Virus record (IMG/VR): IMGVR_UViG_3300046804_003469
Span: 1 to 64,000 of that record
Length of the DNA stretch: 64,000 nt
Direction: 5' to 3' (one strand)
The notes under the pieces: generated by a model
Database searches by the model: none
What the model saw: only the letters and a program-made list of their open reading frames with translations
What the model was told of the DNA's origin: nothing
Position numbers and translations under genes: made by a program
Part shown: positions 1,441-19,658 of the stretch, piece after piece
Layout of the letters: each line of letters begins with the position of its first letter
Numbering within the stretch: position 1 is the stretch's first letter

Positions 1441-1449
1441 GGTAACAAT

Positions 1450-3595: not shown

Positions 3596-4106
3596 TGTTT
3601 GTATTGATAAATTTGTAAGGATAACTCGACCAAATTTAGTTGAAATTGGAAATCATGTAGCAATTGATTTTGGATTTACCTGCACAACACAATTAAAAGT
3701 TGGTGATTATGTGCATATATCTCCTCATGTTTCTGTTATAGGTGGGGAACAAGGAAGATTAGAAATAGATGATTTTTGTTTCATATCTACAGGAGCAAGA
3801 GTTATATGTTCGTCTGAAAAATTTATGGGAGATGGATTAGTCGGTCCTTTTATTCCTAAAGAATATCGAGATACAGTTCTTAAAGGTACAGTTAAATTTG
3901 AAAGATTTTCTGGCATGTGTGCAAATTCTATAATTATGCCAGGAGTTACAATGGCAGAAGGATCCGTACTTGGTGCTAATTCTTTTCTTAAAGAATCTAC
4001 AGAACCTTGGGGGATCTATGCTGGAAGTCCTGCAAGGTTGATAAAGAAAAGAAGGAGTGATATAATTTACAATAACGCAAAAGAAATGGGTTACGTCTAT
4101 GAGTAA
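3576..4106 (+). CDS. Hexapeptide-repeat (left-handed beta-helix) sugar acetyltransferase
   Basis: IGNHVAID, VGDYVHI, MPGVTMAEGSVLGANS, YAGSPAR; start moved to ATG 3576. Confidence 0.8.
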   Translation: MKSIGTDVCIDKFVRITRPNLVEIGNHVAIDFGFTCTTQLKVGDYVHISPHVSVIGGEQGRLEIDDFCFISTGARVICSSEKFMGDGLVGPFIPKEYRDTVLKGTVKFERFSGMCANSIIMPGVTMAEGSVLGANSFLKESTEPWGIYAGSPARLIKKRRSDIIYNNAKEMGYVYE

Positions 4107-5564: not shown

Positions 5565-5570
5565 TTTACT

Positions 5571-6410
5571 ATGATTACATTTTTAGAATTAGGTCAATAT
5601 GGAAGACTTGGAAACCAGTTATTCCAATACGCTGCTTTAAAATCTTTATCAGTTTCTAAAGGATATCAAATAAAACTTCCTGGTAATCTTTATGATAGAG
5701 TGTGGCATAGTCAAAAATGTCTGTTATCTAAATTTAATATAAAGTTTGATAATTTAGAAAGCAGTGATTTATATAATGTAAAGACATATGATCAATATCA
5801 AATAACTGGAAGTGCTCAAGCATATGATCCAAATTTCTTTGATGTAGAAGATAATACAAATCTTTCTGGGTATTATCAAAATCTTAAATATTTTCATCAT
5901 CATTCTGAAGTCATCAAAGAAGATTTTAAAATTGATGAAAGTATTCAAAAAGAATCTATCAAATACCTAGAAGATAAAATTGGATTTGAAAAACCTATTG
6001 TCAGTGTACACATTCGAAGAGGAGATTATGCTCCTCATTCTGATCAAGAATTAATTAAAAATCATATCGAACAGTGTATAAAGTTTTTCAATGATGAAGT
6101 TAACTTCTTGCTTTTTACTGGTGGATCTACAGGAGTAGGAGAAAATAATATTGATGATGTCCAATATTTGAAATCAAATTTTAAAGATAGTAATTTTTAT
6201 TATAGTGAAACAAATAATCCTATTCAAGATTTTTGTTTGATGAGTAACTGTAATCATAATATTATTTCTCACGGTAGCACCTTTAGTTGGTGGGCTGCTT
6301 ATTTAAATTCCAATCAAGATAGAAAAGTCCTTGCTCCTAAAAATCCAGATAGTGTAGATCAAAGTGTAGTATATGATTGCTTCTATCCAGAAGATTGGAT
6401 TTTAATGTAG
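5571..6410 (+). CDS. GT11 alpha-1,2-fucosyltransferase-like
   Basis: GRLGNQLFQYA, HIRRGDY, STFSWWAAYL. Confidence 0.9.
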   Translation: MITFLELGQYGRLGNQLFQYAALKSLSVSKGYQIKLPGNLYDRVWHSQKCLLSKFNIKFDNLESSDLYNVKTYDQYQITGSAQAYDPNFFDVEDNTNLSGYYQNLKYFHHHSEVIKEDFKIDESIQKESIKYLEDKIGFEKPIVSVHIRRGDYAPHSDQELIKNHIEQCIKFFNDEVNFLLFTGGSTGVGENNIDDVQYLKSNFKDSNFYYSETNNPIQDFCLMSNCNHNIISHGSTFSWWAAYLNSNQDRKVLAPKNPDSVDQSVVYDCFYPEDWILM

Positions 6411-6411
6411 T

Positions 6412-6426
6412 TGATGTGGTATAATA
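6412..6426 (+). promoter_or_regulatory. Extended -10 promoter TGATGTGGTATAATA
   Basis: Exact 15-nt copy at 11120-11134; intergenic. Confidence 0.55.
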
Positions 6427-6429
6427 AAG

Positions 6430-7107
6430 ATGGAAAACACTAACAAATGCGGTATGTTTGAAAACATTGAAATACCTTCTAATATTGAGAGAATCTATAT
6501 TGATGTAGGTTTAGCAGCAGATGCTCCACATTCTTTGGAATGGTTATCTTCAGATCCAAATTGTTTTGTATTTGGATTTGAACCAGTTAAAGAAAATTGT
6601 GAACGAGTTTTGGAAAAAATAAAAGAACGTGGATATGAAGATAGGTATAAACTATATGAATGTGCAGTAGACAATGTAGTTGGGCAGCAAGTTAAAGATT
6701 TTTATGTAACTTGTAATTCTGAAGTTGATAGAGATCATGGTCAATCTAGTCTATTCAAATTGAAAGATGAATTGAAGCATTCTGAAGGTACAAAATATTG
6801 GGTTGAAAAGGTTGTCCCTACAGTCTGTATTAATTTGGCAGATTTTTTAATTAAAATTGATTGGGAAAGATTTAAAAATATTTCTTGTCTTAAGACAGAT
6901 ACTCAAGGAAATGATATGAATATACTCAATTCTATCGAATCTTTCTTTGATAGAATCCCATTAATCTTTTGTGAGTCGCATGTTCATGGACAATATCAGA
7001 AGGACGATGATAATCCAAATATTGTATACAATTATATGACAAGTAAAGGATATCAACTTGTAAACTGCAGTATTGATAATGCAGATCATTATTACCAAAG
7101 AGTTTAA
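6430..7107 (+). CDS. FkbM-family methyltransferase
   Basis: IDVG, GFEP, LKTDTQGND. Confidence 0.75.
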   Translation: MENTNKCGMFENIEIPSNIERIYIDVGLAADAPHSLEWLSSDPNCFVFGFEPVKENCERVLEKIKERGYEDRYKLYECAVDNVVGQQVKDFYVTCNSEVDRDHGQSSLFKLKDELKHSEGTKYWVEKVVPTVCINLADFLIKIDWERFKNISCLKTDTQGNDMNILNSIESFFDRIPLIFCESHVHGQYQKDDDNPNIVYNYMTSKGYQLVNCSIDNADHYYQRV

Positions 7108-7112
7108 ATCGT

Positions 7113-8069
7113 ATGAGAGTTGTAACAGATGGATCTGGTGATTACCCAGATGGACCTACAGTAAAAATCAATCTAACTAGATTTGATGAACCTGATAATG
7201 ATACGGTTCTTTTTTATGGATACAATTCTGTCTTCAATCAAGAACTCCGCGAAGAATATAAAAATTATAAAAACAAAATTTTATTGAATCTTTGGATGCC
7301 AACAGAGTTTAATGGTAATCCTCCTTTTCCATCTGGTATGACAGATTATCAACCAGATGGAAAATTCATGGAATATTTTGATACCATTTATACTATTTGT
7401 CCATATACAATTGATTGGATAAAGGAAATGACTGGAGATGAAAGATATAAATTTATCTGGCATCCGTTTGCTTCTCCAAGAGATTATAATGGATCTGATT
7501 TATCATATGAAAAGAAATATGATATGTGTTATTTTGGTGGCATCCATGGAAAGTATCATGAAGATATTGCCAGGGTAGTTAGAGAATATAATGGTAGAAT
7601 TTCTTACATCTATCCCAATCAATATACAACTGATATTGCATTGAGTCATCATCAAAAAATGCAACTTGCTTGTAATTCTAAAATTACAGTGGTAATCAAT
7701 CAATGCCCATTAACTACTAATCATATTAATTCTATTAAGAGATATAAGAATTGGGATAAAAATGAAGCATTTGTTGGGGTAAATTTTGATATTCCTACTG
7801 TTCCTCAATACAAATGTAGAACTGCTGAAGCAGCATTTGCTCGTAGTGTTATTCTTGTAAAACGTGATCGTTGGAATATCATCGAAAATTTCTTTGAAAC
7901 AGATGAGTTTGTCTACTTTGATGATATTAATGATATGAAAGAAAAGATAAATCATATTCTAACTAAATATGAGGAATATCAACCAATGCTTGAAAAGGCA
8001 TATTTAAGATCATTACAAATGGATGGACAAGGAACATTTATGAAAATTAAGGAGAATGAAAATGTTTGA
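7113..8069 (+). CDS. Putative GT-B glycosyltransferase (CgeB/Glyco_trans_1_2-like C-terminus)
   Basis: KYDMCYFGG, KCRTAEAAF, EFVYFDD..KINHIL; context. Confidence 0.55.
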   Translation: MRVVTDGSGDYPDGPTVKINLTRFDEPDNDTVLFYGYNSVFNQELREEYKNYKNKILLNLWMPTEFNGNPPFPSGMTDYQPDGKFMEYFDTIYTICPYTIDWIKEMTGDERYKFIWHPFASPRDYNGSDLSYEKKYDMCYFGGIHGKYHEDIARVVREYNGRISYIYPNQYTTDIALSHHQKMQLACNSKITVVINQCPLTTNHINSIKRYKNWDKNEAFVGVNFDIPTVPQYKCRTAEAAFARSVILVKRDRWNIIENFFETDEFVYFDDINDMKEKINHILTKYEEYQPMLEKAYLRSLQMDGQGTFMKIKENENV

Positions 8070-8604
8070 TACCTCATCAAGAAAAAAATTCGTAGCATCT
8101 TTCCCAGAATCTTTTACTGTCGGAGCAGAAGTAGGGGTATCAAGTGGAGATTTTGCAAAGAACATTCTTACAGTAACAAAGAATGTAAAACTATATTGTG
8201 TAGATATTTGGGAACAAAATTATCAACTTCCAGATCCAGAAAGATCATATAAAGAAACATTCAATAATCTTATTCCTTTTGGTGCTGAAAGATTTGAATT
8301 AGTTCGTGAAGGATCACCAAAATCAGCATTAAGATTTGAAGATGAATTCTTTGATTTTGTTTACATCGATGCAGATCATCATTACGAACCAGTTCTTGAG
8401 GATCTGAAAGCATGGTATCCAAAAGTTAAGAGTGGTGGAGTATTCTTCGGTCACGATTATAATCAACCTTGGGATGGTGTAGTTAATGCAGTTAATGAAT
8501 TCTTTGCTGAAAAAGGATATGAAGTTGGAGTTATTTCTTCTGTTGGATATGCTGATGGCGACCAAGATGGAGGATCTCAAAGTTGGTATGTGATTAAAAA
8601 ATGA
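8062..8604 (+). CDS. Class I SAM-dependent methyltransferase (Methyltransf_24-like)
   Basis: GAEVGV, VDIW, FDFVYIDADH.YE..DL..W..KVKSGG..GHDY; AAGGAG RBS fits ATG 8062. Confidence 0.85.
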   Translation: MFDTSSRKKFVASFPESFTVGAEVGVSSGDFAKNILTVTKNVKLYCVDIWEQNYQLPDPERSYKETFNNLIPFGAERFELVREGSPKSALRFEDEFFDFVYIDADHHYEPVLEDLKAWYPKVKSGGVFFGHDYNQPWDGVVNAVNEFFAEKGYEVGVISSVGYADGDQDGGSQSWYVIKK

Positions 8605-8614
8605 TCTAACCTTT

Positions 8615-9268
8615 ATGAAAAAAATTGCAATTCTTTATAAAGGAATTTTTGGATTGAAAAGAATTAATTCCAAAGGTCTAAAGGATCAAGTTCTTTTGGA
8701 TGCAAAGGAAAATCTTAATGATCATAAAATCAAAATTTTTAATCAAATAAAAGATCTTGGATATGACATTGACTTTTATATGAGCACATATAATGTCAAT
8801 GATGAATTGAATAAAATTTATTTGGAAGAATTGAATCCCAAATTTTATTCTTATCTTCCAAATGAATACTTGAAAAATTATTCAACTTGGCAATGTCAGT
8901 TGATGCATTATAAAAATTTAATTTTAGAATTAAAGAATCAAAACATTTCTTATGATTTTTTAATCTTTACCCGTCCAGACTTGAAATTCCTTCAAGACTT
9001 CAGTACAATTAATTTAAATTTGGATCTATCTAAATTTAATTTACCAGTACAACATTTGTCTGGAAATTGTGATGATAATTTGTTTATCTTTCCGAGTAAT
9101 TTTCTAAATCAATTTGAAAATATTATTGACACTTTGATTAGGAGAAACGGAATAACACATGAAATAAATCATTTATTAGAAGAACAATGTGTCCCAATTA
9201 ATTGGATGAGTTCTTATGTTCATGAAAATGATGAATTTGGGCACAATATATTTTGCTGTTTCCGTTAA
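8615..9268 (+). CDS. Hypothetical glycan-island protein, possibly glycosyltransferase-like
   Basis: KKIAILYKG, YDFLIFTRPDL, CDDNLF; very AT-rich. Confidence 0.5.
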   Translation: MKKIAILYKGIFGLKRINSKGLKDQVLLDAKENLNDHKIKIFNQIKDLGYDIDFYMSTYNVNDELNKIYLEELNPKFYSYLPNEYLKNYSTWQCQLMHYKNLILELKNQNISYDFLIFTRPDLKFLQDFSTINLNLDLSKFNLPVQHLSGNCDDNLFIFPSNFLNQFENIIDTLIRRNGITHEINHLLEEQCVPINWMSSYVHENDEFGHNIFCCFR

Positions 9269-9280
9269 TTAAAAACTATT

Positions 9281-10084
9281 ATGATTGAACATAATTATTC
9301 AAAAGATTTTGACAATCTGAAAACCAAACTATTAGAAGGAGAAAACTTTGCCTTTTTAAGATTTTCTGATGGTGAGGGATATATTCTTTATAATCAATAC
9401 TTAGAATTGAATGATAAAGGATATAACCTGGATGGATCTACTGGATACGCTTACTATGGTAAAGAAGAGCAAAAATTATTTGATCCAGAAAAACATTCCT
9501 TTTATAGAGAAAGACTCATTGAATCCTTAGAATACGTTGCTGACAATTATTATAAAGGTCTTCCAATGAGATATGATTGTGAAGCATGTGGTTTTATCTT
9601 TGATGAATTGATTGAAAATGCTGGAGGAGATAGTGAATATCTAACTTTTGCTAACTTATGGAATAATGCAAATTATCCAAGGTTCGTTGAAGAAATTGTT
9701 CCAATTTTTTCTGATAAGAAAATTGTTATGGTTGTAAATGAATGTGCAAATATTGATAAACTACCTTTCAAAGTAGAAAAAGATTTTAGAGTTGGAACTA
9801 ACTGTTTTATCAATAACTATGATATAATTGAAGAGATCAAGGCATACATAACTGATAATTCAATTCAAGATCATGTGTTCTTAATTTCTGCATCTAGTTT
9901 AAGTAATTTAATCGTTCATCAATTATACGAGATGAACAAGAATAATACTTATATTGATATTGGAAGCACGTTAAATCCTTTAATGGATATGACTGGTTGG
10001 ACAGGAACTAGAACATACTTGTCGCAATATTGGAATTCAGAATCATCTAAAGCACAACTTGAACTAGTTGATACCTGGGTATAA
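9281..10084 (+). CDS. GT-D-fold-like glycosyltransferase
   Basis: FAFLRFSDGE and IDIGS motifs resemble GT-D/DUF1792. Confidence 0.55.
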   Translation: MIEHNYSKDFDNLKTKLLEGENFAFLRFSDGEGYILYNQYLELNDKGYNLDGSTGYAYYGKEEQKLFDPEKHSFYRERLIESLEYVADNYYKGLPMRYDCEACGFIFDELIENAGGDSEYLTFANLWNNANYPRFVEEIVPIFSDKKIVMVVNECANIDKLPFKVEKDFRVGTNCFINNYDIIEEIKAYITDNSIQDHVFLISASSLSNLIVHQLYEMNKNNTYIDIGSTLNPLMDMTGWTGTRTYLSQYWNSESSKAQLELVDTWV

Positions 10085-10088
10085 ATTT

Positions 10089-11132
10089 ATGAACGAACTA
10101 AAACTAATTCCCAATGAACAAAAATATTGGGAGTTTATTCGGGAATTGAGATTTCATCCAAATAATCTTTCGGGATTTGTTATTTCTGAAGAAGTAACAA
10201 CTGAACAACAAATTGAATACATGAAAAAATATAATGATACTTATTTTATTTGTTTGGATGAATCTGAAAATCCTGTAGGATTTATTGGTGAAGTTGATAA
10301 TGATATTCGTTTAGCAGTACATCCAGATTCCAAAGGAAAAGGAATTGGTAAGTACATGTTAAATGAATTCATGAAGACTCATCCTTTTGCCACTGCTAAA
10401 ATCTTATCAGATAATACAGCAAGTCTTAAAACCTTTTATTCATGTGGATTTATCTCACATAAGTTTGATGGAAAGTTTTTCTATCTTACAAAAACTGAAC
10501 ACGGATATTATAAGATCAAACATAATCCATACAAAATTGTGAGAATGTTTGAAGAATCAATTGCAGATTACACTGGTGCTCCTTATGCAATTTCTGTAGA
10601 TAGTTGTACCAATGCTTTGTTTTTATGTTGTAAATATCTGGAAGTTAAAGATGTAATGATTCCATCAAAGACTTATCTTTCTGTTCCAGAATCAATTATG
10701 CAAGCAGGAGGAAATGTAATCTTTGATACTGAAAGAAATAATTGGACTGGAACATATCAATTGAAACCGTATCCAATATGGGATTCTGCTAAAAGATTAA
10801 CTTCGAATATGTACATTCCAGGATCTTTCATGTGCTTATCTTTCCACATCAAAAAAACTTTAAAGATTGGTAAAGGTGGAATAATTTTAACTGATGATGA
10901 AAATGCTGTAGAATGGTTTAAAAAAGCAAGATACGAAGGAAGAAGCGAAAAATTATACAAAGAAGATAACATTCAGACCGAAGGGTGGAATATGTATATG
11001 ACACCTCAACAAGCAGCACACGGTCTTTGTCTATTACAAAACTACCCACTTCATGTACCAGATCTAGGTGAAGAGAACGGATATTCTGATCTTCGTCAAT
11101 TTGATTTATTTTCTAAATGTGATGTGGTATAA
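10089..11132 (+). CDS. GNAT acetyltransferase fused to a DegT-family aminotransferase
   Basis: N-terminal VHPDSKGKGIG and NTASLKTF GNAT motifs; C-terminal VDSCTNAL, DSA, SFHIKK, GKGGIIL. Confidence 0.8.
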   Translation: MNELKLIPNEQKYWEFIRELRFHPNNLSGFVISEEVTTEQQIEYMKKYNDTYFICLDESENPVGFIGEVDNDIRLAVHPDSKGKGIGKYMLNEFMKTHPFATAKILSDNTASLKTFYSCGFISHKFDGKFFYLTKTEHGYYKIKHNPYKIVRMFEESIADYTGAPYAISVDSCTNALFLCCKYLEVKDVMIPSKTYLSVPESIMQAGGNVIFDTERNNWTGTYQLKPYPIWDSAKRLTSNMYIPGSFMCLSFHIKKTLKIGKGGIILTDDENAVEWFKKARYEGRSEKLYKEDNIQTEGWNMYMTPQQAAHGLCLLQNYPLHVPDLGEENGYSDLRQFDLFSKCDVV

Positions 11133-11134
11133 TA
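11120..11134 (+). promoter_or_regulatory. Extended -10 promoter TGATGTGGTATAATA
   Basis: Identical to 6412-6426; about 25 nt before ORF 11159. Confidence 0.6.
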
Positions 11135-11158
11135 TACGAAAACTTTATTAAGAGAATT

Positions 11159-11911
11159 ATGAGCAAAAGTATTACAGTTATTTTAAATGGTTACAAAAGA
11201 AATAATCTGAAAGAACAAGTAGAAGCAATTAGAAATCAAACAGTTCCTGTCCAAGAAATTTTTTATTGGCAAAACACTGTACCTGGATTCTCTTATGATG
11301 AAGATACTTATTCTGAATTAAATTCTGCCCTTAGTAACTATAATTATGGTGTTTGGGCAAGATTTGCATATGCATTGAATGCAAGGACTGATTATGTTTG
11401 TGTATTTGATGATGATACTATTCCTGGAAATAAGTGGCTAGAGAATTGTTTAAACACTTATGAAACACATCCTGGTCTTTTGGGTGGAATTGGTCTCTGG
11501 TTTAAAAATAAAAACTATGAGTTAGAGACTCTTGAAGATGGACAACCTGCCAGATTTGGGTGGCATGTTAATAATAACGCTACAGTTCAAGTTGATATTG
11601 TTGGTCATTCTTGGTTTTTCTCTAGAGATCTTCTTTCAGTATTTTGGAGAGAAATGCCTGAGAAACATTGGACAATGTTGTGTGGAGAAGATATTCATTT
11701 CTCGCATATGATTCAAAAATACACTGATCTTAAAACATGGGTTCCTCCACATCCTTCAAATGATACTTCTATGTGGAGTAGTTTAAAGGCACTTCAATAT
11801 GGTGGAGATCATTTGGCAACAGCAAATATTACAGTTCAAACTGGTGAGATGGCTCAATATCTTTCTTATTGTGTTGATAATGGATTTAAACTTCTTAAAG
11901 ATTTAAAATGA
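11159..11911 (+). CDS. GT-A fold (GT2-like) glycosyltransferase
   Basis: ITVILNGYKR, VCVFDDDTIPG, GEDIHFS. Confidence 0.7.
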   Translation: MSKSITVILNGYKRNNLKEQVEAIRNQTVPVQEIFYWQNTVPGFSYDEDTYSELNSALSNYNYGVWARFAYALNARTDYVCVFDDDTIPGNKWLENCLNTYETHPGLLGGIGLWFKNKNYELETLEDGQPARFGWHVNNNATVQVDIVGHSWFFSRDLLSVFWREMPEKHWTMLCGEDIHFSHMIQKYTDLKTWVPPHPSNDTSMWSSLKALQYGGDHLATANITVQTGEMAQYLSYCVDNGFKLLKDLK

Positions 11912-12783
11912 TTAATATTTTTTATTCTGATTCATATTTTGGATATACAAATAGAATGTGTGGTCCAAAAAAAGTTGTTTGTAATTTAATTGAATCTTTA
12001 GAACAGGAAAAAGTACCTTATTCAATTAATGAAGATGTTTATGATTATAATTTCTTACTTCAATATGATGCAATAGGTTATCAAAAACATGAAAATTTAG
12101 AGCATGAAAGTTGTGTTATAGGACCACAATTCTGGCCTTTTGATGGAGATATCTATGGTAATTTTCTAATTGATAACCCACAATACTATAAAAAGTTAAT
12201 TGCTCCATCTTATTGGGTCAAAGATTTATTGGTAGATAAGTTTAAATTACCAGAAAATAAAGTTTCTATTTGGCCAGTTGGAATCAAAGATCTTTCTGGA
12301 ATTAAAAATGAGACAAGTACAACTGATTGTTTAATCTATTTCAAATCTCGTTCAGAAGAGGATCTTGAATTTGTTAAGAACTTTTTAAACTATAAGAGAA
12401 TTACCTATAAAGTAATCGGGTATGGATCTTATTCTGAGGAGGAATTTTATGAAGAACTTTCAAAAGTAAAATTTTGTTTTATCTTAAATCATACTGAAAG
12501 TCAAGGTATTGCAATTCAGGAAATGATGTCAGCAAATATTCCTCTTCTTGTTTGGGATGTTCCATATTGGGATCACAAAGGAGAAGAATATAAACTTCCA
12601 TCTAGTTCTGTTCCTTATTGGAATTCCGAATGTGGAGAAAAGTTTTATACTGCCTTTGACATTGAATCGACTTTTGAAAAATTCTATGATAAAATGGAAC
12701 AGTACAGTTCTAGAAAAATATACGATACTGAGTTATCTTATAAAGTTACTGTTGAAAAAATATTAAAAATTTTTGAAGAATGA
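11908..12783 (+). CDS. GT-B fold (GT4-like) glycosyltransferase
   Basis: ESQGIAIQEMMS (Ex7E motif), IAPSYWV. Confidence 0.7.
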   Translation: MINIFYSDSYFGYTNRMCGPKKVVCNLIESLEQEKVPYSINEDVYDYNFLLQYDAIGYQKHENLEHESCVIGPQFWPFDGDIYGNFLIDNPQYYKKLIAPSYWVKDLLVDKFKLPENKVSIWPVGIKDLSGIKNETSTTDCLIYFKSRSEEDLEFVKNFLNYKRITYKVIGYGSYSEEEFYEELSKVKFCFILNHTESQGIAIQEMMSANIPLLVWDVPYWDHKGEEYKLPSSSVPYWNSECGEKFYTAFDIESTFEKFYDKMEQYSSRKIYDTELSYKVTVEKILKIFEE

Positions 12784-13469
12784 AAATTTGTATTCTCACG
12801 ATTGCTACTAATAAGTATCTTCAATTTGTAGAAAAACTCTATGATAATATTGAAGAAAGATTTTTAAATGGACATGAAATTAGTTGCTTGTTATTTACAG
12901 ATCATGAAGTAGAAACTTCAGAAAATATCAAAGTACATTATATTGATCATGAACCTTGGCCTATGCCAACACTTAAAAGATATAATTACTTTTTAAAGGA
13001 AAAGGATTTTATTCTTCAGCATGATTATTGTTTTTATTTCGATGCAGATATGAGGATTGATAATCCTGTTGGAGATGAAATTCTTGGTGATTTAGTAGGT
13101 ACTAAACATCCATATCAATCCTTTCATAAACTTGATGAAATGTCTTATGAGAGGAGACCAGAATCTTTAGCATATGTTCCTTATGGTGAAGGTGAAACTT
13201 ATTATGCTGGAGGATTTAATGGTGGAAAAACAACAAGATTCTTGGAGATGGCAGAAGTAATTGCCAATAATGTAAATAGGGATCTTGAGAACAATATAGT
13301 TGCAGTATGGCATGATGAAAGTCATATGAATAGATATATGATTGATAATCCACCAACCTTAAGTTTAACTCCATCGTATTGTTATGCTGAAGAATTTTAT
13401 GGAACGGATTATCCATATGAACCAAAAATTATTGCATTAAAGAAGAATCACAATGAACTTAGATCTTAG
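12780..13469 (+). CDS. GT6 (ABO-type alpha-1,3-Gal/GalNAc transferase family)
   Basis: IATNKY, WPMPTLKRY, FDADM, YYAGGFNGG, WHDESHMNRY. Confidence 0.9.
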   Translation: MKICILTIATNKYLQFVEKLYDNIEERFLNGHEISCLLFTDHEVETSENIKVHYIDHEPWPMPTLKRYNYFLKEKDFILQHDYCFYFDADMRIDNPVGDEILGDLVGTKHPYQSFHKLDEMSYERRPESLAYVPYGEGETYYAGGFNGGKTTRFLEMAEVIANNVNRDLENNIVAVWHDESHMNRYMIDNPPTLSLTPSYCYAEEFYGTDYPYEPKIIALKKNHNELRS

Positions 13470-14097
13470 AGAAATTCCTGCTGTTTATTTAAATCTTGAA
13501 AAGCATACTGAAAAAAATGAAAGTATGCAAAATCTTCTTAAAGAATGTGGATTTAAAAATATTATTCGGGTAGAGGGAGTTGCAAGACCAGATAACACTG
13601 TTGCTGGATGTTCTGCTGCTCATTATAAAGGACTTGGTGAAATTGATCCTCCATTTATTCTTTTTGAGGATGATTGTGTAATTAAAAATTTTAGACCAGT
13701 AATTGAGATCCCAGATGATGCTGATGCAGTTTATCTTGGAATTTCATCATGGGGTAGAATGAATGGTCATTCGGGACCTTACCTTCAATATAAACATATT
13801 AAAGATGATTTATACCAAGTTTATAATATGCTTGGTGGTCATGCGATCTTGTATTTAACTGAAGATTATGTTAAAATGTGCCAGAGAATTACATATCATG
13901 CTGGTTATATAATCGAAGATTATCAAGATATTGGATTTGCTGAAGTTCAGCGTTGGTTTAATGTTTATACGTTTGATGATCCATTCTTTTTCCAAACAAG
14001 TGGATACCATGGAACTGTAAATCCACTTACAAGTTATCCTACAGAAGAATGTTTCAAATATGATAAAAACTATTTCTTACCTGAGAGAGTTGTATGA
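13453..14097 (+). CDS. GT25-like glycosyltransferase
   Basis: VYLNL, GCSAAH, ILFEDD, DAVYLG, GHAILY. Confidence 0.65.
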   Translation: MNLDLREIPAVYLNLEKHTEKNESMQNLLKECGFKNIIRVEGVARPDNTVAGCSAAHYKGLGEIDPPFILFEDDCVIKNFRPVIEIPDDADAVYLGISSWGRMNGHSGPYLQYKHIKDDLYQVYNMLGGHAILYLTEDYVKMCQRITYHAGYIIEDYQDIGFAEVQRWFNVYTFDDPFFFQTSGYHGTVNPLTSYPTEECFKYDKNYFLPERVV

Positions 14098-14993
14098 TTA
14101 AAAGTTTAGTTACTGGTGGTGCTGGATTTATTGGTTCAAACCTCGTAGACCGTTTACTTGAAATGGGACACGAGGTTGTTGTAATTGATAATGAGTACTC
14201 TGATGCTCATGATCAATTTTATTGGAATGATAAAGCACAAAACTATAAGTATGATATTCGTGATTATAAAAATACTCGACCTTTGTATGATGGAGTAGAT
14301 TATGTATTTCATATTGCAGCAGAGGCACGTATTCAACCAGCAATTTTAAATCCTATTGAAGCAGTAAGTATTAATTCTGTTGGAACTTGTACTGTTCTTC
14401 AGTGTGCTCGTGAAGCAGGCGTTAAACGTGTAATGTATTCTTCTACATCTTCTGCATATGGAACTAACCAACCTCCAAATGTGGAAACTCAACCAGACGA
14501 TTGTTTAAATCCTTATTCAGTTTCTAAGGTGAATGGTGAAAAACTATGTAAGATGTATACAGATCTCTTTGGATTACCTACAGTTATCTTTAGGTATTTC
14601 AATGTATATGGTGAAAGGCAACCTTTAAGAGGTCAATATGCTCCTGTAATTGGTATTTTCCTCCGTCAACGTGCTGCTGGAGAACCTTTAACTATTGTTG
14701 GTGATGGAGAACAACGTAGAGATTTTACTTACGTTGGAGATGTTGTAAATGCTAATGTTATGGCAGCAATTTCAAATCCAGATCCAGAAGCATTTGGACA
14801 AGTTTATAATGTAGGAACTAATAATAATTATTCAATCAATCAAATTGCAAGAATGTTTGATCATCAAACTGTAAATATTGCTCCTAGACCTGGAGAAACT
14901 AAATTAAGTCTTGCAAACAACCAAAAAATTAAAAAAACATTTGGTTGGCAACCAACTGTAAAACTTGAAAATTGGATACAAGAAAACTTATGA
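14094..14993 (+). CDS. NAD-dependent NDP-sugar 4-epimerase (GalE/WbpP-like)
   Basis: TGGAGFIGS, SSTSSAYG, YSVSK, RYFNVYG, GDGEQRRDF. Confidence 0.9.
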   Translation: MIKSLVTGGAGFIGSNLVDRLLEMGHEVVVIDNEYSDAHDQFYWNDKAQNYKYDIRDYKNTRPLYDGVDYVFHIAAEARIQPAILNPIEAVSINSVGTCTVLQCAREAGVKRVMYSSTSSAYGTNQPPNVETQPDDCLNPYSVSKVNGEKLCKMYTDLFGLPTVIFRYFNVYGERQPLRGQYAPVIGIFLRQRAAGEPLTIVGDGEQRRDFTYVGDVVNANVMAAISNPDPEAFGQVYNVGTNNNYSINQIARMFDHQTVNIAPRPGETKLSLANNQKIKKTFGWQPTVKLENWIQENL

Positions 14994-15745
14994 ATCGTAT
15001 TACTGATTATTCTGAATTGCAAAATAATATTGTAACTTGGATTAAAGAATATGCTAATTCTAATGGCATTGAATCTCTTGTAGTGGGAATTTCTGGAGGA
15101 ATCGATTCTTCAGTTGTTTCCACTCTTTGTGCTGAGACAGGACTTCCTACTTATGCTTTGTCTATGCCTTTGATGCAAATTTCATCTCAATCTGAATTAT
15201 CTAATACACACCGAGAATTTCTTTCAAAGAAATATAATAATGTAATTTCACTCAAAATTGATTTATCAACAACCTACAATCAGTTTTTAACAGCATCTAG
15301 ATTTTGGTTAGGTGAAGATATGGTCTCCAATAATTTAGCATTGGCAAATACAAAATCTCGTCTTCGTATGGTGACTCTTTATCAAGTTGCTGGATCCGTT
15401 AAGGGTATTGTTGTTGGTACTGGTAATAAAGTCGAAGATTATGGTGTAGGATTCTATACTAAATATGGTGACGGAGGAGTTGACATTGCTCCTATTGCTG
15501 ATCTTTATAAAACTGAAGTATGGGAACTTGGAAAGCATCTTGGTGTAGATCAACGTATTATTGATGCACAACCTACAGATGGTCTCTGGGAAGACGGAAG
15601 AACCGATGAAAATCAAATCGGTGCTTCCTATGCTGAACTTGAAGAAGCAATGGAAAATGGAACTGGTCCTGCAGTTGAAATACTTAAAAAATTCAACGCA
15701 CAAAATAAACACAAAATGATTTCTATTCCTACATTTAAACTATGA
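14990..15745 (+). CDS. nadE: NH3-dependent NAD+ synthetase
   Basis: GISGGIDS PP-loop, NTKSRLRM, GTGNKVE, GFYTKYGDG, PIADLYKTEV, PTDGLW..TDE. Confidence 0.9.
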   Translation: MNRITDYSELQNNIVTWIKEYANSNGIESLVVGISGGIDSSVVSTLCAETGLPTYALSMPLMQISSQSELSNTHREFLSKKYNNVISLKIDLSTTYNQFLTASRFWLGEDMVSNNLALANTKSRLRMVTLYQVAGSVKGIVVGTGNKVEDYGVGFYTKYGDGGVDIAPIADLYKTEVWELGKHLGVDQRIIDAQPTDGLWEDGRTDENQIGASYAELEEAMENGTGPAVEILKKFNAQNKHKMISIPTFKL

Positions 15746-16893
15746 AGATTGGAGTTATCGGAGCAGGAAGACTTGGCATTTGCTTTGCTCTTCTAATGGA
15801 AAAAGCAGGATACGATATATTGGTATCTGATATTCGTGAGAATTATGTTAATGATCTAAACAATAAAAAGATCATAACAAATGAACCTCATGTCCAAGAA
15901 CTGCTGTCAAATTCTAAAAAAATTGTGGCAACTACGGACAATAAAAAAGTAATTGAAGAGTGTGATATTATTTTTACTTTAGTTGCTACACCTTCTCTTC
16001 CTGATGGCAGTTACGATGTAAGTTCCGTTTGGGAAGTTATTGACGACATTCAAAATTCTGAAAAGTCGAGAAATAAATTATTTGTTGTTGGTTGTACAAC
16101 AAATCCAGGAGACTGTGAGAAGTTCCAGGAAGAACTTTTACCTTATAGTGTTGATGTATTATATAATCCAGAATTTATTGCACAAGGATCTATTATCAAT
16201 GATCTTGAAAATGCAGACATGGTTTTGATTGGTGGTAATAATCCTTCCAACATTGAAAAGATTAAAGAAATTTATTATAAGATTCAAATCAACAAACCAA
16301 ATATTTGTACAATGTCTCCTAAGGCAGGTGAAATTACAAAAATTGCTATCAACTGCTTCTTAACTTCAAAGATTAGTTTTGCCAATATGATTGGTGAAGT
16401 GATGTGTTTATCTGGAATGGAAGATGAAGTATCTGACGTTCTAACTGCAATTGGAAGTGATACAAGAATAGGAGGAAAATATCTGAAATATGGATATGGA
16501 TTTGGTGGTCCATGTTTCCCTAGAGATAATAGATCCTTTGCTTCTTATGCTGAAAGCGTTGGATGTCAATTTAATATTGGAAGAACTACTGATAATTTTA
16601 ATAAAAAGCATGTAGAGTTTTTAAAAAATTATTTTATAAACAAAAACTCAAATAATGAACCATATTACTTTGATTATATTTCTTATAAGAAGGGAACTGA
16701 TATACTGATAGAAAGTCAACAATATCAATTGTGTTTAGAATTATTGAATTCTGGATATGTAGTTTATGTAAATGATATAGAATCTGTTGTTGAACAAGTT
16801 AAAGAATCGTTAGAAAATAAATTTTATGATAGAATTAGATTTGTCAAAGATGAATCTGAGTTACCAGAAAAAATTTTAAAAATTAAATTTTAA
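15742..16893 (+). CDS. ugd: UDP-glucose 6-dehydrogenase family protein
   Basis: GAGRLG, VATPS, NPEFIAQG, KISFAN, GFGGPCFPRD. Confidence 0.8.
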   Translation: MKIGVIGAGRLGICFALLMEKAGYDILVSDIRENYVNDLNNKKIITNEPHVQELLSNSKKIVATTDNKKVIEECDIIFTLVATPSLPDGSYDVSSVWEVIDDIQNSEKSRNKLFVVGCTTNPGDCEKFQEELLPYSVDVLYNPEFIAQGSIINDLENADMVLIGGNNPSNIEKIKEIYYKIQINKPNICTMSPKAGEITKIAINCFLTSKISFANMIGEVMCLSGMEDEVSDVLTAIGSDTRIGGKYLKYGYGFGGPCFPRDNRSFASYAESVGCQFNIGRTTDNFNKKHVEFLKNYFINKNSNNEPYYFDYISYKKGTDILIESQQYQLCLELLNSGYVVYVNDIESVVEQVKESLENKFYDRIRFVKDESELPEKILKIKF

Positions 16894-16898
16894 GACTT

Positions 16899-17750
16899 AT
16901 GAAAATAACTATACTTGGTTCTAGTGGTCAAATTGGAACTTACCTTACAGAATATTTGCGTGAAAAGGGTCACTATGTTTACGAGTTTGATGTTGTAAAC
17001 AATCCTCATGAGGATATGACTCAGATTCCAAATCCTCTTTTGGAAGAAAGAATTGCAGATTCTGATTTTGTATTCTTCCTTGCATTTGATGTTGGTGGAT
17101 CTCGTTATCTTAAAAAGTACCAACATACTTTCCAATTTATTAATAATAATTGCCGTTTGATGGCAAATGCTTTTACTATACTTCAGAAGTATAATAAGAG
17201 ATTTATTTTTGCTTCGTCTCAGATGAGCAATATGAGTTATTCTCCTTATGGAGTTCTTAAGAACGTTGGAGAACTTTATACTAAATCCTTGAATGGTTTG
17301 ATTGTAAAGTTTTGGAATGTCTATGGTATTGAAAAGGATCATGAAAAAGCACATGTCATCACAGACTTTATTCGTAAAGGATTTGAGACTGGTGTGATTG
17401 ATATGATGACTGATGGTGAAGAAGAAAGAGATTTTCTTTATGCTGAAGACTGCTGTGAAGCATTAGAAATAGTGATGGAAAAATATACTGAATTTACATA
17501 TGAAGATGATCTTCATATTACAAGTTTCAAAAACACTAAAATTAGAGATGTTGCCAGTATTATATCTGGACAGTTTAATTTGATTGGAATGCATGACGTA
17601 AAAGTTCAACCATCAGAAGAAAAAGATAGTGTTCAATTAGATAAAAGAAATCAAGCGAGTACTTTTATTACAAAATGGTGGATTCCAAAGACAACAATTG
17701 ATCAAGGTATTGCAAAAGTATTTGAGGAAATGAAGAATGATCGGAAATAA
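16899..17750 (+). CDS. NAD-dependent epimerase/dehydratase
   Basis: LGSSGQIG, FASSQ, YGVLK, NVYG, DGEEERDFLY. Confidence 0.8.
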   Translation: MKITILGSSGQIGTYLTEYLREKGHYVYEFDVVNNPHEDMTQIPNPLLEERIADSDFVFFLAFDVGGSRYLKKYQHTFQFINNNCRLMANAFTILQKYNKRFIFASSQMSNMSYSPYGVLKNVGELYTKSLNGLIVKFWNVYGIEKDHEKAHVITDFIRKGFETGVIDMMTDGEEERDFLYAEDCCEALEIVMEKYTEFTYEDDLHITSFKNTKIRDVASIISGQFNLIGMHDVKVQPSEEKDSVQLDKRNQASTFITKWWIPKTTIDQGIAKVFEEMKNDRK

Positions 17751-18591
17751 TACTATTGGTACAATGGGACGTTTGGGAAATCAAATGTTTCAGTATGCAT
17801 CATTAAAGGGAATTGCTGTCAATAATGGATTTGAGTATACAATACCGCCACAAAATCCTCAGATTCAAATTGATAATTATGGTCTTTTAGAGGCATTTGA
17901 ATTATCCACCAATAAAAATATTGGTTGGAGTGAATCTGAGTTTGGAATACAGGAAAGGTTCTTTCATTTCGATGAAGAACTTTTTAACAATTGTAGGGAT
18001 GATGTAAATTTGGTCGGATTTTTTCAATCTGAAAAGTACTTTAAACATATTGAAAAAGAACTTCGTCAGGATTTTACTTTTAAATCGGATTGGTTAACTC
18101 CATGTCTTGAATTTAGAAAAGAATTTGAAAATCAAGAAGTTTTGTTTCTTCATGTTCGTAGGGGAGATCCAAATCTTTCTGATAAACGTGGGTTTAAATG
18201 GGCGTATGTGAATCTTCAGGATCAACATCCTGTTCAATCTTTAGAATATTATGAACAGGCATTGAAAGAATTTCCTGAAGATATGCCAGTGATTGTTTTT
18301 TCTGATTCAATTGAATGGTGTAAAGAGCAAGAAATTTTTAAACCAGATAGGTTTATGTTCTCTGAACCTGAGCATAAACATTCTGATGGTGCTTTAGTTC
18401 CTTACACTGATTTATGCTTGATGTCTTTATGTGATCATGCTATAATTGCGAATAGTTCTATGAGTTGGTGGGGTGCCTGGTTAATTAAAAATCCAAATAA
18501 AAAAGTAATTGCACCAAAAACTTGGTTTGGATCTGCCTATGCAGATAAAGATACTAAAGATCTTTATTGTGAAAATTGGATAGTACTATGA
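17737..18591 (+). CDS. GT11 alpha-1,2-fucosyltransferase-like
   Basis: GRLGNQMFQYA, GFFQSEKYF, HVRRGD, NSSMSWWGAW. Confidence 0.9.
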   Translation: MIGNNTIGTMGRLGNQMFQYASLKGIAVNNGFEYTIPPQNPQIQIDNYGLLEAFELSTNKNIGWSESEFGIQERFFHFDEELFNNCRDDVNLVGFFQSEKYFKHIEKELRQDFTFKSDWLTPCLEFRKEFENQEVLFLHVRRGDPNLSDKRGFKWAYVNLQDQHPVQSLEYYEQALKEFPEDMPVIVFSDSIEWCKEQEIFKPDRFMFSEPEHKHSDGALVPYTDLCLMSLCDHAIIANSSMSWWGAWLIKNPNKKVIAPKTWFGSAYADKDTKDLYCENWIVL

Positions 18592-18601
18592 AAATCTGAA
18601 G

Positions 18602-18865
18602 ATGATTAGAAAAATAAGAGTATTTTTATGGAGTATAGCTTTTGAATTAGAAAATATACTATACCCATATAGTGCATTTTCTGAAGAAGACTATTATATT
18701 AAAGTAAAAAATGATGAGACTGGTGAAAACTATTTGATTATAGATTGGATCAAAGCACACAAAGAACAAATAGAAAGATTACAAGAAGAAATGATATGGG
18801 TAAAATCTGAGTTGAATAGAATTCAAGAATCAATCAAAAATCATGACGATTATGGACAAAAATAA
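18602..18865 (+). CDS. Hypothetical protein with coiled-coil C-terminus
   Basis: Fills the operon gap; heptad pattern. Confidence 0.55.
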   Translation: MIRKIRVFLWSIAFELENILYPYSAFSEEDYYIKVKNDETGENYLIIDWIKAHKEQIERLQEEMIWVKSELNRIQESIKNHDDYGQK

Positions 18866-19658
18866 ATCAGCATACAAACTTAAAAATTTTGGGCCAGTAT
18901 ATTACCTAAATCTGGATGGTCAACCAGAAAGGGCACAATATATGGAGGATCAATTTAAGTATTGGGAAGTTGAAAACTACACTCGTATTTCTGCCTATGA
19001 TGGTAGAGAAGATGATTTGGGTGATATTATTAAAGGTAAATATCCAGATATGATGACATCTGGAGAAGTTGGATGCGTTACATCACACCTTAAAGCAATT
19101 AAGCATTGGTATGAAACTTCAGATAGTCCTTATGCGATTATTATGGAAGATGATTGTAATTTAGATCCAGTAAGATTTTGGAATTTTACTTGGGATGATT
19201 TTATTTGTAGAGTACCATATGATTGGGATGTAGTTCAAATTGCAATCATTTGTACTGGAGATATTCACGTAAGACTTCATAAGAGGTTTGTGAATGATTT
19301 CTCCACTGCTTGTTATATTATAAATCGTCATCATGCTGAAAAACTTTTAAAACATCATATTCGTGGTGACAAATATAAACTTGATAATGGTGTAAAACCT
19401 CGTCCTGTTGCTGATGATTTGATCTATAATTCTGGAAATACCTATAGCATTCCTCTACTTTTATATAAAATTGAATTGGGTTCTTCAATTCATCCTGAAC
19501 ATATTGACATTTTCCACAGAGCAAGTCATGATGGACTTGTCAATTTCTGGACTCAAAATGGAGCACAGTTTGCTATTGAATCTTTAATGGATTATGATCC
19601 ATATTTGGGGAGAGTTGTTGAAAATACCGCTGCTCAACAAGCACAACAACCCTCTTGA
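18843..19658 (+). CDS. GT25 (LPS-biosynthesis) glycosyltransferase
   Basis: YYLNLD..ER, RISAYDG, GEVGCVTSHL, IMEDD, STACYII. Confidence 0.85.
   Translation: MTIMDKNKSAYKLKNFGPVYYLNLDGQPERAQYMEDQFKYWEVENYTRISAYDGREDDLGDIIKGKYPDMMTSGEVGCVTSHLKAIKHWYETSDSPYAIIMEDDCNLDPVRFWNFTWDDFICRVPYDWDVVQIAIICTGDIHVRLHKRFVNDFSTACYIINRHHAEKLLKHHIRGDKYKLDNGVKPRPVADDLIYNSGNTYSIPLLLYKIELGSSIHPEHIDIFHRASHDGLVNFWTQNGAQFAIESLMDYDPYLGRVVENTAAQQAQQPS

What the first reader, a model, noticed from the sequence alone, without database searches (positions are those of the whole stretch)
14990..15745. NAD synthetase embedded in the glycan island
Seen: an intact NH3-dependent nadE, coupled by ATGA overlaps to an epimerase and a UDP-glucose dehydrogenase; no other NAD-pathway gene is in this window. 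Known: the described phage NAD-reconstitution routes that counter NAD-depleting defences use other enzymes (ADPR-PP synthetase with Namat, or NamPT with NMNAT). Inference: it either supplies NAD through the deamidated route, possibly as counter-defence, or has been repurposed to amidate an NDP-uronic acid made by the neighbouring dehydrogenase.
Basis: partly seen in the sequence, partly recalled or inferred. Interest (0 to 1): 0.6.

Follow-up and report, generated by a model that had tools for sequence, protein, structure and literature searches.

The report
Phage NAD synthetase hard-wired to sugar dehydrogenase
This cyanophage gene is an intact, ordinary-looking ammonia-dependent NAD synthetase of a kind already annotated in related phages; its one unusual feature is that, in every related phage examined, it sits directly in front of a nucleotide-sugar dehydrogenase that uses NAD.

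Summary
Window 14990-15745 (+) encodes an intact 251-aa single-domain NadE. ATGA overlaps join it to an SDR epimerase/dehydratase upstream and an NDP-sugar 6-dehydrogenase ("ugd") downstream. The window is part of a 215-kb T4-like cyanomyovirus with no other NAD-pathway gene in the families searched.

The gene is a known kind. Orthologues are annotated in S-SSM7, P-TIM68, Bellamy and pelagiphage HTVC008M.

Its ATP/Mg site is intact. Twelve of 16 published NaAD-contact positions are invariant in 84 phage copies, and the other four vary just as they do in the sole NadE of SAR11 and MGII genomes. No residue pattern tracks the link to ugd. I therefore read it as a real NaAD-to-NAD+ synthetase.

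What appears new is the context:
- nadE->ugd is a fixed cassette: 82 of 82 untruncated viral loci, and 81 of 82 in the reverse test.
- Only 1 of 80 cellular loci carrying the closest NadE relatives shows the pairing.
- It recurs, with three different NadE subtypes, in glycan clusters of three Patescibacteria genomes.

Best reading: NAD+ provisioning for the NAD+-consuming dehydrogenase. This is an inference. Amidation of the uronate is disfavoured by the sequence but not excluded. The counter-defence idea has no support. Interest is moderate.

The parts
14990..15745 (+). nadE: single-domain NH3-type NAD+ synthetase, 251 aa (P0001). PP-loop at S35-GGIDS-S40.
   Evidence: PF02540 E=2.9e-49; TIGR00552 182 bits. 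AF2 model pLDDT 89.5; TM-scores normalised to the query 0.84-0.85 to 3FIU, 1NSY and 2PZ8.
15742..16893 (+). NDP-sugar 6-dehydrogenase ('ugd', 383 aa, P0121), the invariant downstream partner. It has the GxGxxG loop, invariant D30 (the classic NAD-preferring acidic residue) and the catalytic Cys in GGPCFPRDN. The C-terminal nucleotide-binding domain is short and weak.
   Evidence: TIGR03026 220 bits against 189.8; PF03720 only 23 bits against a cut-off of 30.
14094..14993 (+). SDR epimerase/dehydratase (299 aa), overlapping the nadE start by ATGA. This upstream neighbour varies among related phages.
16899..17750 (+). Second SDR epimerase/dehydratase (283 aa), downstream of ugd.
373..19658 (+). 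Glycan island: a co-oriented block of about 22 genes holding SDRs, GT2/GT6/GT11/GT25-type glycosyltransferases, methyltransferases, DegT-like pieces and a hexapeptide transferase. The nadE-ugd cassette sits inside it.

Best explanation
The gene encodes a working ammonia-dependent NAD+ synthetase. It adenylates the nicotinate carboxylate of host-made NaAD with ATP and replaces the AMP with ammonia, giving NAD+. It is not free-standing. With the NDP-sugar 6-dehydrogenase immediately downstream it forms a fixed, translationally coupled two-gene cassette inside a phage glycan island whose other genes are shuffled freely between phages. The dehydrogenase is the one enzyme of the island that turns over free NAD+, using two per uronic acid made. 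The most economical reading is that the phage brings its own last step of NAD+ synthesis to keep that dehydrogenase supplied in small or NAD-poor cells. What is shown: family membership, an intact catalytic and NaAD site, purifying selection, and the invariant gene pairing. What is inferred: the enzyme activity itself, and above all the reason for the pairing.
For: (1) Family and fold. PF02540 and TIGR00552 score well above their cut-offs. All best PDB matches are NadE enzymes. The AF2 model (pLDDT 89.5) superposes on NadE structures with TM-scores normalised to the query of 0.77-0.85. (2) Active site. I used the published residue table for 18 NadE structures (Table S4 of PMC3376133), mapped through E. 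coli NadE. All core ATP, PPi and Mg contacts are invariant in 84 cyanophage copies; the exception is the Mg(II)/nicotinate position Ec A212, which is Asp in both phage and cellular clades. Twelve of 16 NaAD contacts are also invariant or near-invariant: Y21, H241, Y131 and D165 for the adenosine; N120, R124 and K242 for the pyrophosphate; E207 and F155 for the N-ribose; Y156, T157 and L199 for the nicotinate. The other four vary in the same way in cellular orthologues. (3) Closest cellular relatives. These are 50-60% identical and are the only full-length NadE in SAR11, MGII and Dehalococcoidia genomes; the SAR11 genome also has NadD. They are therefore housekeeping NaAD amidases. (4) No signature of a new function. 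The few cyanophage-specific substitutions (Y151, A167, T248) are shared with sister MAGs that are not ugd-linked, and are absent from the ugd-linked HTVC008M and LR756502 proteins. The stem of the phage clade is no longer than neighbouring stems. (5) Purifying selection. Codon-position differences are 3rd > 1st > 2nd. (6) Pairing. Ugd follows nadE in 82 of 82 untruncated viral loci, directly in 66, while at least 10 different genes occupy the upstream slot. In the reverse test 81 of 82 usable ugd loci have nadE upstream. Only 1 of 80 cellular loci shows the pairing. Phages with similar islands but no ugd (P-SSM2, S-B05) also lack nadE. (7) Generic NadE activity seems to be what is selected. 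In homologous glycan clusters of three Patescibacteria genomes the slot before ugd holds three different NadE subfamilies, one of them a two-domain glutamine-dependent form. Each has the NaAD-site residues typical of its own subfamily. Chloroflexota with the same Ugd-methyltransferase module keep their single NadE elsewhere. (8) The dehydrogenase has an invariant Asp at the end of beta-2 (D30), the usual mark of NAD rather than NADP preference (the meaning of that residue is textbook knowledge).
Against: A dehydrogenase does not consume NAD+. It only reduces it, so it is not obvious why more synthesis would help. I know of no precedent for a cofactor-synthesis gene wired to a single user enzyme. 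No measurement of NAD pools or of Ugd kinetics backs the idea. The same pairing is equally what one would expect if NadE acted on the dehydrogenase's product. In the three Patescibacteria genomes with the cassette no NadD above cut-off was found. If those genomes are complete, NadE would have no NaAD to work on there. Independent acquisition by phages is not demonstrated: the AU test does not reject a single phage clade (p=0.455), so much of the phage linkage could stem from one event that was then retained. The NCBIfam equivalog model NF010587 scores 182 bits, below its cut-off of 255.
Confidence: 0.55

Rival explanations
1. Sugar amidation. The NadE-like enzyme adenylates the C6 carboxylate of the NDP-uronic acid made by the adjacent dehydrogenase and converts it to the carboxamide, giving an NDP-uronamide. 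The product might be ADP-linked, which would fit the retained ADP pocket. This would be a two-step pathway encoded by the cassette.
For: The pairing is obligate in both directions, keeps the order nadE->ugd, and often has overlapping stop and start codons. The pair survives while ugd diverges to 27-29% identity. The same pair lies inside glycan clusters of Patescibacteria, a phylum where only 21 of 201 sampled genomes have any NadE; NadD was not found in the three cassette genomes. A conserved methyltransferase of the module has as its nearest named relatives several carboxyl O-methyltransferases, though at weak scores, which hints that the module works on the carboxylate. The chemistry is the same as in AsnB-type uronate amidotransferases (general knowledge).
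Against: Residues that hold the adenine, both riboses, the pyrophosphate and the nicotinate ring of NaAD are invariant across 84 phage copies and equal to those of housekeeping enzymes. No substitution correlates with ugd linkage. Three unrelated NadE subtypes, including an allosterically coupled glutamine-dependent form, would each have had to gain the new activity while keeping canonical sites. There is no hit to the known PP-loop sugar amidotransferase model TIGR03573. Most cellular Ugd-methyltransferase modules lack NadE altogether.
Confidence: 0.2
2. A general NAD-boosting auxiliary metabolic gene with no special relation to ugd. The adjacency would be an inherited accident of one ancestral capture, kept because the two genes share one transcript and coupled translation.
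For: Phage monophyly is not rejected. Cyanophage NAD synthetase is already listed as a generic AMG, and field transcripts with a diel rhythm are reported (PMC10452541, PMC7238727). A methyltransferase can be inserted between the two genes without loss of either.
Against: Everything else in the island is reshuffled while this pair never separates, across more than 160 loci, several host groups and nadE divergence down to 50%. nadE is absent from related phages that lack ugd. The pair recurs with non-orthologous NadE types in cellular clusters.
Confidence: 0.12
3. Counter-defence. The enzyme rebuilds NAD+ after depletion by Thoeris-, SIR2- or DSR-type systems, through the deamidated route.
For: NAD+ restoration by phages is an established strategy.
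Against: The cleavage products are nicotinamide and ADP-ribose. Reaching NaAD from them needs PncA, PncB and NadD, and the genome has none of these. NARP1-3 contain no NadE. The gene's only constant companion is a sugar dehydrogenase.
Confidence: 0.05
4. NMN synthetase. Like its best PDB match, the Francisella enzyme 3FIU, it amidates NaMN to NMN rather than NaAD.
For: 3FIU is the top match by both sequence and fold. The protein is of the short type.
Against: The adenosine contacts of NaAD are conserved. At the position where, as I recall from Sorci et al. 2009 (a paper I could not retrieve), the Francisella enzyme has Q133, the window protein has Gly like NaAD-type enzymes. No NMN adenylyltransferase is in the genome. 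The related archaeal short NadE was shown to have NADS activity and no NMNS activity (PMC3376133).
Confidence: 0.05

Closest known systems
Annotated 'NAD synthetase' genes of cultured marine myoviruses (S-SSM7 gp258, S-SSM6a, P-TIM68 gp179, Bellamy gp225, Sf-FS3, S-SCSM2R, pelagiphage HTVC008M gp161)
   Same: These are orthologues, 50-65% identical over the full length, in the same position in front of a ugd-family gene within a glycan island.
   Different: None has been characterised biochemically. Bellamy has a methyltransferase inserted between nadE and ugd. The Bellamy and HTVC008M dehydrogenases are only 27-29% identical to the window's.
Housekeeping single-domain NadE of SAR11, Marine Group II archaea and Dehalococcoidia; solved relative P. 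horikoshii 2E18; characterised relative M. jannaschii NadE
   Same: 50-60% identity, the same length class, and identical catalytic and NaAD-site residues. The archaeal enzyme is a proven NH3-dependent NAD synthetase (PMC3376133).
   Different: In these cellular genomes the gene is not next to ugd: 79 of 80 loci lack the pairing.
Francisella tularensis NMN synthetase (PDB 3FIU)
   Same: Best PDB match by sequence (E=2.3e-39) and by fold (TM-score normalised to the query 0.84).
   Different: The window protein keeps the NaAD adenosine contacts and, at one recalled specificity position, the NaAD-type residue. It has no NMNAT partner.
Phage NAD+ reconstitution pathways NARP1 (Adps+Namat), NARP2 (Nampt+Nmnat) and NARP3 (PnuC+NadR)
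   Same: Phage-encoded enzymes that end in NAD+.
   Different: They use different enzymes and different precursors, and they serve a defence-related role. None of their components is in this genome.
Uronate amidotransferases of O-antigen clusters (AsnB-like, such as WbpS) and PP-loop N-acetyl-sugar amidotransferases (WbpG/PseA, TIGR03573)
   Same: ATP-pyrophosphatase chemistry on a carboxylate or related group, and a location in glycan clusters. This is the model for the rival reading (general knowledge).
   Different: There is no sequence membership: TIGR03573 is not among the NCBIfam hits. The protein carries a complete NaAD site.

Membership tests
NH3-dependent NAD+ synthetase (NadE, single-domain; PF02540 / TIGR00552) | Profile score above the curated cut-off | tested here: met
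   PF02540 scores 167.8 bits against 21 and TIGR00552 scores 182.1 against 63.65. The stricter equivalog model NF010587 scores 182 against 255 and is not reached.
NH3-dependent NAD+ synthetase (NadE, single-domain; PF02540 / TIGR00552) | N-type ATP pyrophosphatase PP-loop SGGxDS, plus the ATP, PPi and Mg2+ ligands | tested here: met
   S35-GGIDS-S40, R126, T144, E149, D161, K174, P195 and T196 are invariant in 84 phage copies.
NH3-dependent NAD+ synthetase (NadE, single-domain; PF02540 / TIGR00552) | NaAD-binding residues (adenine, both riboses, pyrophosphate, nicotinate) as tabulated from solved structures | tested here: met
   Twelve of 16 positions are conserved and invariant or near-invariant. 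The other four vary equally in housekeeping orthologues (Table S4 of PMC3376133).
NH3-dependent NAD+ synthetase (NadE, single-domain; PF02540 / TIGR00552) | No glutaminase (CN_hydrolase) domain or subunit | tested here: met
   The protein is 251 aa with only the synthetase domain in Pfam. No separate search for a glutaminase subunit elsewhere in the genome was made.
NH3-dependent NAD+ synthetase (NadE, single-domain; PF02540 / TIGR00552) | NadE fold | tested here: met
   The AF2 model has pLDDT 89.5. All top Foldseek hits are NadE, with TM-scores normalised to the query up to 0.85. The dimer was not modelled.
NH3-dependent NAD+ synthetase (NadE, single-domain; PF02540 / TIGR00552) | Catalyses NaAD + ATP + NH3 -> NAD+ + AMP + PPi | not testable with these tools
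   Needs an enzyme assay or complementation.
NMN synthetase (Francisella NadE* type) | Specificity residues that exclude the adenylyl part of NaAD, and co-occurrence with an NMN adenylyltransferase in place of NadD | tested here: inconclusive
   The residue list is from memory only, because the paper is not held. The window has N25 and G135 where I recall Y27 and Q133. The adenosine contacts are conserved. No PF01467 protein is in the phage genome.
Phage NAD+ reconstitution pathways NARP1 / NARP2 / NARP3 | Presence of Adps+Namat, Nampt+Nmnat, or PnuC+NadR | tested here: not met
   The 215-kb genome has no PF13793, PF04095 or PF01467 match. PnuC and Namat were not searched separately.
Known sugar amidotransferases (WbpG/PseA type, TIGR03573) | Match to the family model | tested here: not met
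   TIGR03573 is not among the NCBIfam hits at E<=0.01.
UDP-glucose/GDP-mannose dehydrogenase family (the partner gene) | N-terminal NAD-binding domain, central domain with the catalytic Cys, and C-terminal nucleotide-sugar-binding domain | tested here: inconclusive
   The N-terminal and central domains and the Cys motif are present, and TIGR03026 is over its cut-off. The C-terminal domain scores 23.3 bits against 30, and no equivalog model is reached. The sugar and the nucleotide are therefore unknown.

The most novel reading that the evidence does not exclude
The nadE->ugd cassette, shared by marine and freshwater myoviruses, a 642-kb uncultured phage and some Patescibacteria, is a two-step pathway. 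A NAD-synthetase-family enzyme amidates the NDP-uronic acid made by its neighbour, giving NDP-uronamides for charge-neutral surface glycans. That would be a sugar-nucleotide amidation route not described so far.
Probability: 0.2. Interest if true: 0.8.

Novelty: new member of a known kind. Interest (0 to 1): 0.4.

Why it matters
The gene on its own is routine: phage NAD synthetase is already catalogued as an auxiliary metabolic gene. What the comparison adds is that the gene is never independent. In hundreds of viral contigs it is locked to one NAD-dependent sugar dehydrogenase, and the same lock appears in glycan clusters of ultra-small bacteria. The full-text searches found no paper linking the two genes. 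If the provisioning reading is right, this is a rare case of a virus carrying a cofactor-synthesis step for one specific enzyme, which would imply that NAD+ limits glycan synthesis in very small cells. If the minority reading is right, it is a new route to uronamide sugars. A simple enzyme assay with cultured relatives can decide between the two.

Tried and rejected
- **Complex prediction.** Complex prediction on NadE+Ugd returned no answer (score 0.00). It counts neither for nor against binding.
- **Independent acquisition by phages.** The quick tree places HTVC008M inside the SAR11/Dehalococcoidia clade and LR756502 with a Saccharibacteria MAG. The AU test does not reject one phage clade (p=0.455), so I do not claim convergence among phages.
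- **Phage-specific substitutions.** A123S, F151Y, S167A, Y232L and V248T first looked like pocket remodelling. They proved to be phylogenetic: shared with sister MAGs that are not ugd-linked, and absent from other ugd-linked phage NadEs.
- **First structure model.** The first AF2 model, from 11 close sequences, was poor (pLDDT 65). I replaced it with a model from 43 sequences.
- **Francisella NMN synthetase paper.** It could not be retrieved, so its signature residues are quoted from memory only.
- **Expression.** No RNA run holds the stretch. The only expression evidence is a published field study of the gene family.
- **NadD in cassette genomes.** NadD is absent from all three cassette-bearing Patescibacteria, against 5 of 18 others that have it. 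The numbers are too small and the MAGs too incomplete to use.
- **Methyltransferase.** Its nearest named families are carboxyl O-methyltransferases, but the scores are far below cut-offs, so this is only a hint.
- **Not run.** The large representative protein search was not used, because the word search and family scans had already settled the family.
Full report
**What is in the window**

The window belongs to a T4-like cyanomyovirus. It carries psbA (30401-31480), psbD (31707-32768), a gp53 baseplate wedge gene and a tail lysozyme. It forms the first 64 kb of a 215,027-bp IMG/VR virus record that CheckV rates as complete. G+C is 30-40%. The public runs that hold the stretch are labelled freshwater metagenome, so I name no host genus.

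Positions 373-19658 form a co-oriented block of about 22 genes. The block holds SDR epimerases/dehydratases, GT2, GT6, GT11 and GT25-type glycosyltransferases, methyltransferases and aminotransferase pieces.

Inside this block, ORF 14990-15745 encodes a 251-aa protein, P0001.
- Its ATG lies in an ATGA that ends the upstream SDR gene (14094-14993).
- Its TGA lies in an ATGA that starts the downstream gene (15742-16893).

**Family assignment**

P0001 matches Pfam NAD_synthase (E=2.9e-49) and NCBIfam TIGR00552 (182 bits, cut-off 63.65). It has no glutaminase domain. All PDB sequence matches are NadE enzymes. The best is 3FIU, the Francisella NMN synthetase, followed by 2E18 from P. horikoshii. 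An AlphaFold2 model built on 43 homologues (pLDDT 89.5) finds only NadE structures, with TM-scores normalised to the query of up to 0.85.

The downstream protein, P0121, belongs to the NDP-sugar 6-dehydrogenase family (TIGR03026, 220 bits against 189.8). It has:
- the glycine-rich loop;
- an invariant Asp30, the usual sign of NAD rather than NADP preference;
- the catalytic Cys motif.

Its C-terminal nucleotide-binding domain scores below threshold, and no equivalog model is reached. Calling it "UDP-glucose dehydrogenase" is therefore a family-level guess.

**Already known as a gene**

Orthologues 50-68% identical are annotated as NAD synthetase in S-SSM7, S-SSM6a, P-TIM68, Bellamy, Sf-FS3, S-SCSM2R and pelagiphage HTVC008M. 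A review counts "NAD synthetase" in 24 of 153 cyanophages. A field study reports diel transcripts of a cyanomyovirus NAD synthetase. Marine and freshwater metagenomes hold thousands of close relatives.

**Does the active site still look like a NaAD site?**

Table S4 of PMC3376133 lists the residues that contact ATP, Mg2+ and each part of NaAD in 18 solved NadE structures. I mapped these positions through E. coli NadE onto 84 cyanophage copies and 80 cellular relatives.

All core ATP, PPi and Mg contacts are invariant. The one exception is the position equivalent to E. coli A212, which is Asp in both the phage and the cellular clade.

Of the 16 NaAD contacts, 12 are invariant or near-invariant in the phage clade and equal or conservative to the E. 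coli or B. subtilis residue:

| Part of NaAD contacted | Conserved residues in P0001 |
|---|---|
| Adenine and its ribose | Y21, H241, Y131, D165 |
| Pyrophosphate | N120, R124, K242 |
| Nicotinate ribose | E207, F155 |
| Nicotinate ring | Y156, T157, L199 |

The remaining four positions (I140, N25, L116, D197) behave the same way in the cellular clade.

The closest cellular relatives (50-60% identity) come from SAR11, Marine Group II archaea and Dehalococcoidia. In five such genomes the relative is the only full-length NadE. The complete SAR11 chromosome also encodes NadD. These relatives are therefore housekeeping NaAD amidases.

A comparison of phage and cellular copies found only five clade-specific, conservative substitutions. 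Three of them (Y151, A167, T248) also occur in sister MAGs that are not ugd-linked. The ugd-linked proteins of HTVC008M and LR756502 lack them. They are marks of ancestry, not of function. Codon-position differences (3rd > 1st > 2nd) show purifying selection. Nothing in the protein suggests a new substrate.

**The unexpected part: an obligate nadE->ugd cassette**

In S-SSM7, P-TIM68 and HTVC008M the gene after nadE is a ugd-family gene. In Bellamy a methyltransferase lies between the two.

I clustered all ORFs of 86 viral loci. Ugd follows nadE in 82 of them, and the other four loci are cut off by contig ends. The two genes are directly adjacent in 66 loci and separated by one or two inserted genes in 16. 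At least ten different gene families occupy the slot upstream of nadE, and several different families follow ugd.

In the reverse test, 83 viral loci were fetched with a ugd profile. Of these, 81 have nadE upstream, one is truncated, and one has only 1.3 kb of upstream sequence.

Among 80 cellular loci holding the closest NadE relatives, five diverse ugd queries at E<=1e-3 found a neighbour in only one.

The pair persists although the dehydrogenases of Bellamy and HTVC008M are only 27-29% identical to the window's. It is also present, with overlapping genes, in a glycan island of the 642-kb uncultured phage LR756502. Related phages with similar islands but no ugd (P-SSM2, S-B05, RN05-S) also lack nadE.

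A tree places HTVC008M among the SAR11 sequences and LR756502 with a Saccharibacteria MAG. The AU test does not reject a single phage clade (p=0.455). I therefore do not claim independent captures by phages.

**The same pairing in cells**

The single cellular exception, L110, is a Saccharibacteria MAG. Its gene order is Wzy-like, SDR, NadE, Ugd, methyltransferase, GT4, FkbM methyltransferase.

Only 21 of 201 sampled genomes of that phylum have any NadE, and three of those 21 have it directly before ugd. Their clusters are homologous, but the NadE differs in each:

| Genome | NadE type | Order in cluster |
|---|---|---|
| G006 (L110) | short type, 56% identical to the window's | NadE - Ugd - MT |
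| G069 | another single-domain type, about 33% identical | NadE - MT - Ugd |
| G109 | two-domain CN_hydrolase + synthetase form | NadE - Ugd - MT |

Each of the three keeps the NaAD-site residues typical of its own subfamily (compared).

The methyltransferase is a well-conserved family: phage and Patescibacteria copies are 44-53% identical. Among 401 sampled genomes of the phylum it occurs only in these three.

In metagenome contigs that carry this methyltransferase and have long flanks, Ugd is present within the 6-kb flanks, mostly adjacent, in 25 of 32. A two-domain NadE sits directly upstream of Ugd in 6 of 32. Two Chloroflexota genomes have the Ugd-methyltransferase module, but their only NadE lies on another contig.

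Taken together, Ugd plus methyltransferase is a widespread glycan module. NadE joins it in phages and in some ultra-small bacteria. Any NadE type seems to serve.

**Interpretation**

Two readings fit a locked pair.

1. *NadE makes what Ugd uses.* Ugd uses two NAD+ per uronate made.
2. *NadE acts on what Ugd makes.* It would amidate the uronate carboxylate.

- the NaAD site is complete, conserved and under selection;
- no linkage-specific residue exists;
- NadE subfamilies are interchangeable in the cellular clusters.

Its weakness is conceptual. A dehydrogenase recycles NAD and does not consume it, so the benefit of extra synthesis is assumed, not shown. My own rough argument is that cells of about 0.01-0.1 cubic micrometres hold only some 10^4-10^5 NAD molecules. 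That is an estimate from general knowledge, not a result.

The second reading is chemically reasonable and explains the gene order and the glycan context. It requires canonical NaAD pockets to accept a different substrate in three subfamilies. I give it about 0.2.

Counter-defence is unsupported. The genome lacks PncA, NaPRT/NamPT, NadD/NMNAT and Adps-like genes, and NARP1-3 do not use NadE.

An NMN-synthetase role is unlikely, given the conserved adenosine contacts and the absence of an NMNAT.

A test for a physical NadE-Ugd complex gave no answer.

**Verdict**

- The gene is a new member of a known kind, most probably a genuine NAD+ synthetase.
- The finding worth keeping is the invariant nadE->ugd cassette and its cellular counterparts. 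I did not find it described in the searched literature.
- One enzyme assay would explain it.

Noticed in passing
window 1450-2238 (+): A second NDP-sugar dehydrogenase family ORF of only 262 aa (P0122). It has the glycine-rich loop and the catalytic Cys motif but no C-terminal nucleotide-binding domain. It is flanked by two SDR genes and is not next to any nadE.
   Followed up: partly
window 4099-4704 (+) and 10068-11132 (+): DegT/DnrJ-type aminotransferase similarity is split. One 201-aa ORF matches only profile positions 164-240. A 354-aa ORF combines a GNAT acetyltransferase with profile positions 23-98. These may be gene fragments or domain shuffling within the island.
   Followed up: no
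window 19755-21263 (+), 21404-22369 (+), 22882-23496 (+): Just after the glycan island the phage encodes an OprB-type carbohydrate porin with an SLH domain, a PstS-like phosphate-binding protein and a peroxiredoxin. A phage-borne outer-membrane porin is unusual.
   Followed up: no
L165:5738-6517, L166:7999-8832, L110:7092-7940, L273:4170-4988(-), L274:6461-7234; alignment A4: A conserved class-I methyltransferase of about 260 aa travels with ugd in phages, Patescibacteria, Chloroflexota and many soil and sediment contigs. Phage and Patescibacteria copies are 44-53% identical. Its nearest named families are carboxyl O-methyltransferases (BioC, CmoM, Mtf2, Tam), at weak scores. It is absent from this window.
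   Followed up: partly
L003 (HTVC008M), NadE residues aligned to window positions 25 and 135: The pelagiphage NadE has Tyr and Gln at these two positions. As I recall, the Francisella NMN synthetase has Y27 and Q133 there, so this protein could prefer NaMN. The window protein has Asn and Gly.
   Followed up: no
L002:650-1084 (P-TIM68 gp170); G001:C1:842449-842856; many hits: Half-size ORFs labelled 'NAD synthetase' (about 140-180 aa, matching only the C-terminal half of the family profile) occur in P-TIM68, in a SAR11 chromosome 9 kb from its nadE, and in many unrelated phages such as Bacillus phage G and Xanthomonas phages. None is in this window's genome.
   Followed up: no
window 15302-15316 (NadE residues 105-109): A five-residue insertion (FWLGE in the window) is present in about half of the phage clade and absent from nearly all cellular relatives. 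In the model it lies at the end of a helix, before the helix that carries N120 and R124.
   Followed up: no
window 13400-17800: The public runs that hold this stretch almost completely are labelled freshwater metagenome, although the nearest cultured relatives are marine cyanophages. No RNA run was found.
   Followed up: no
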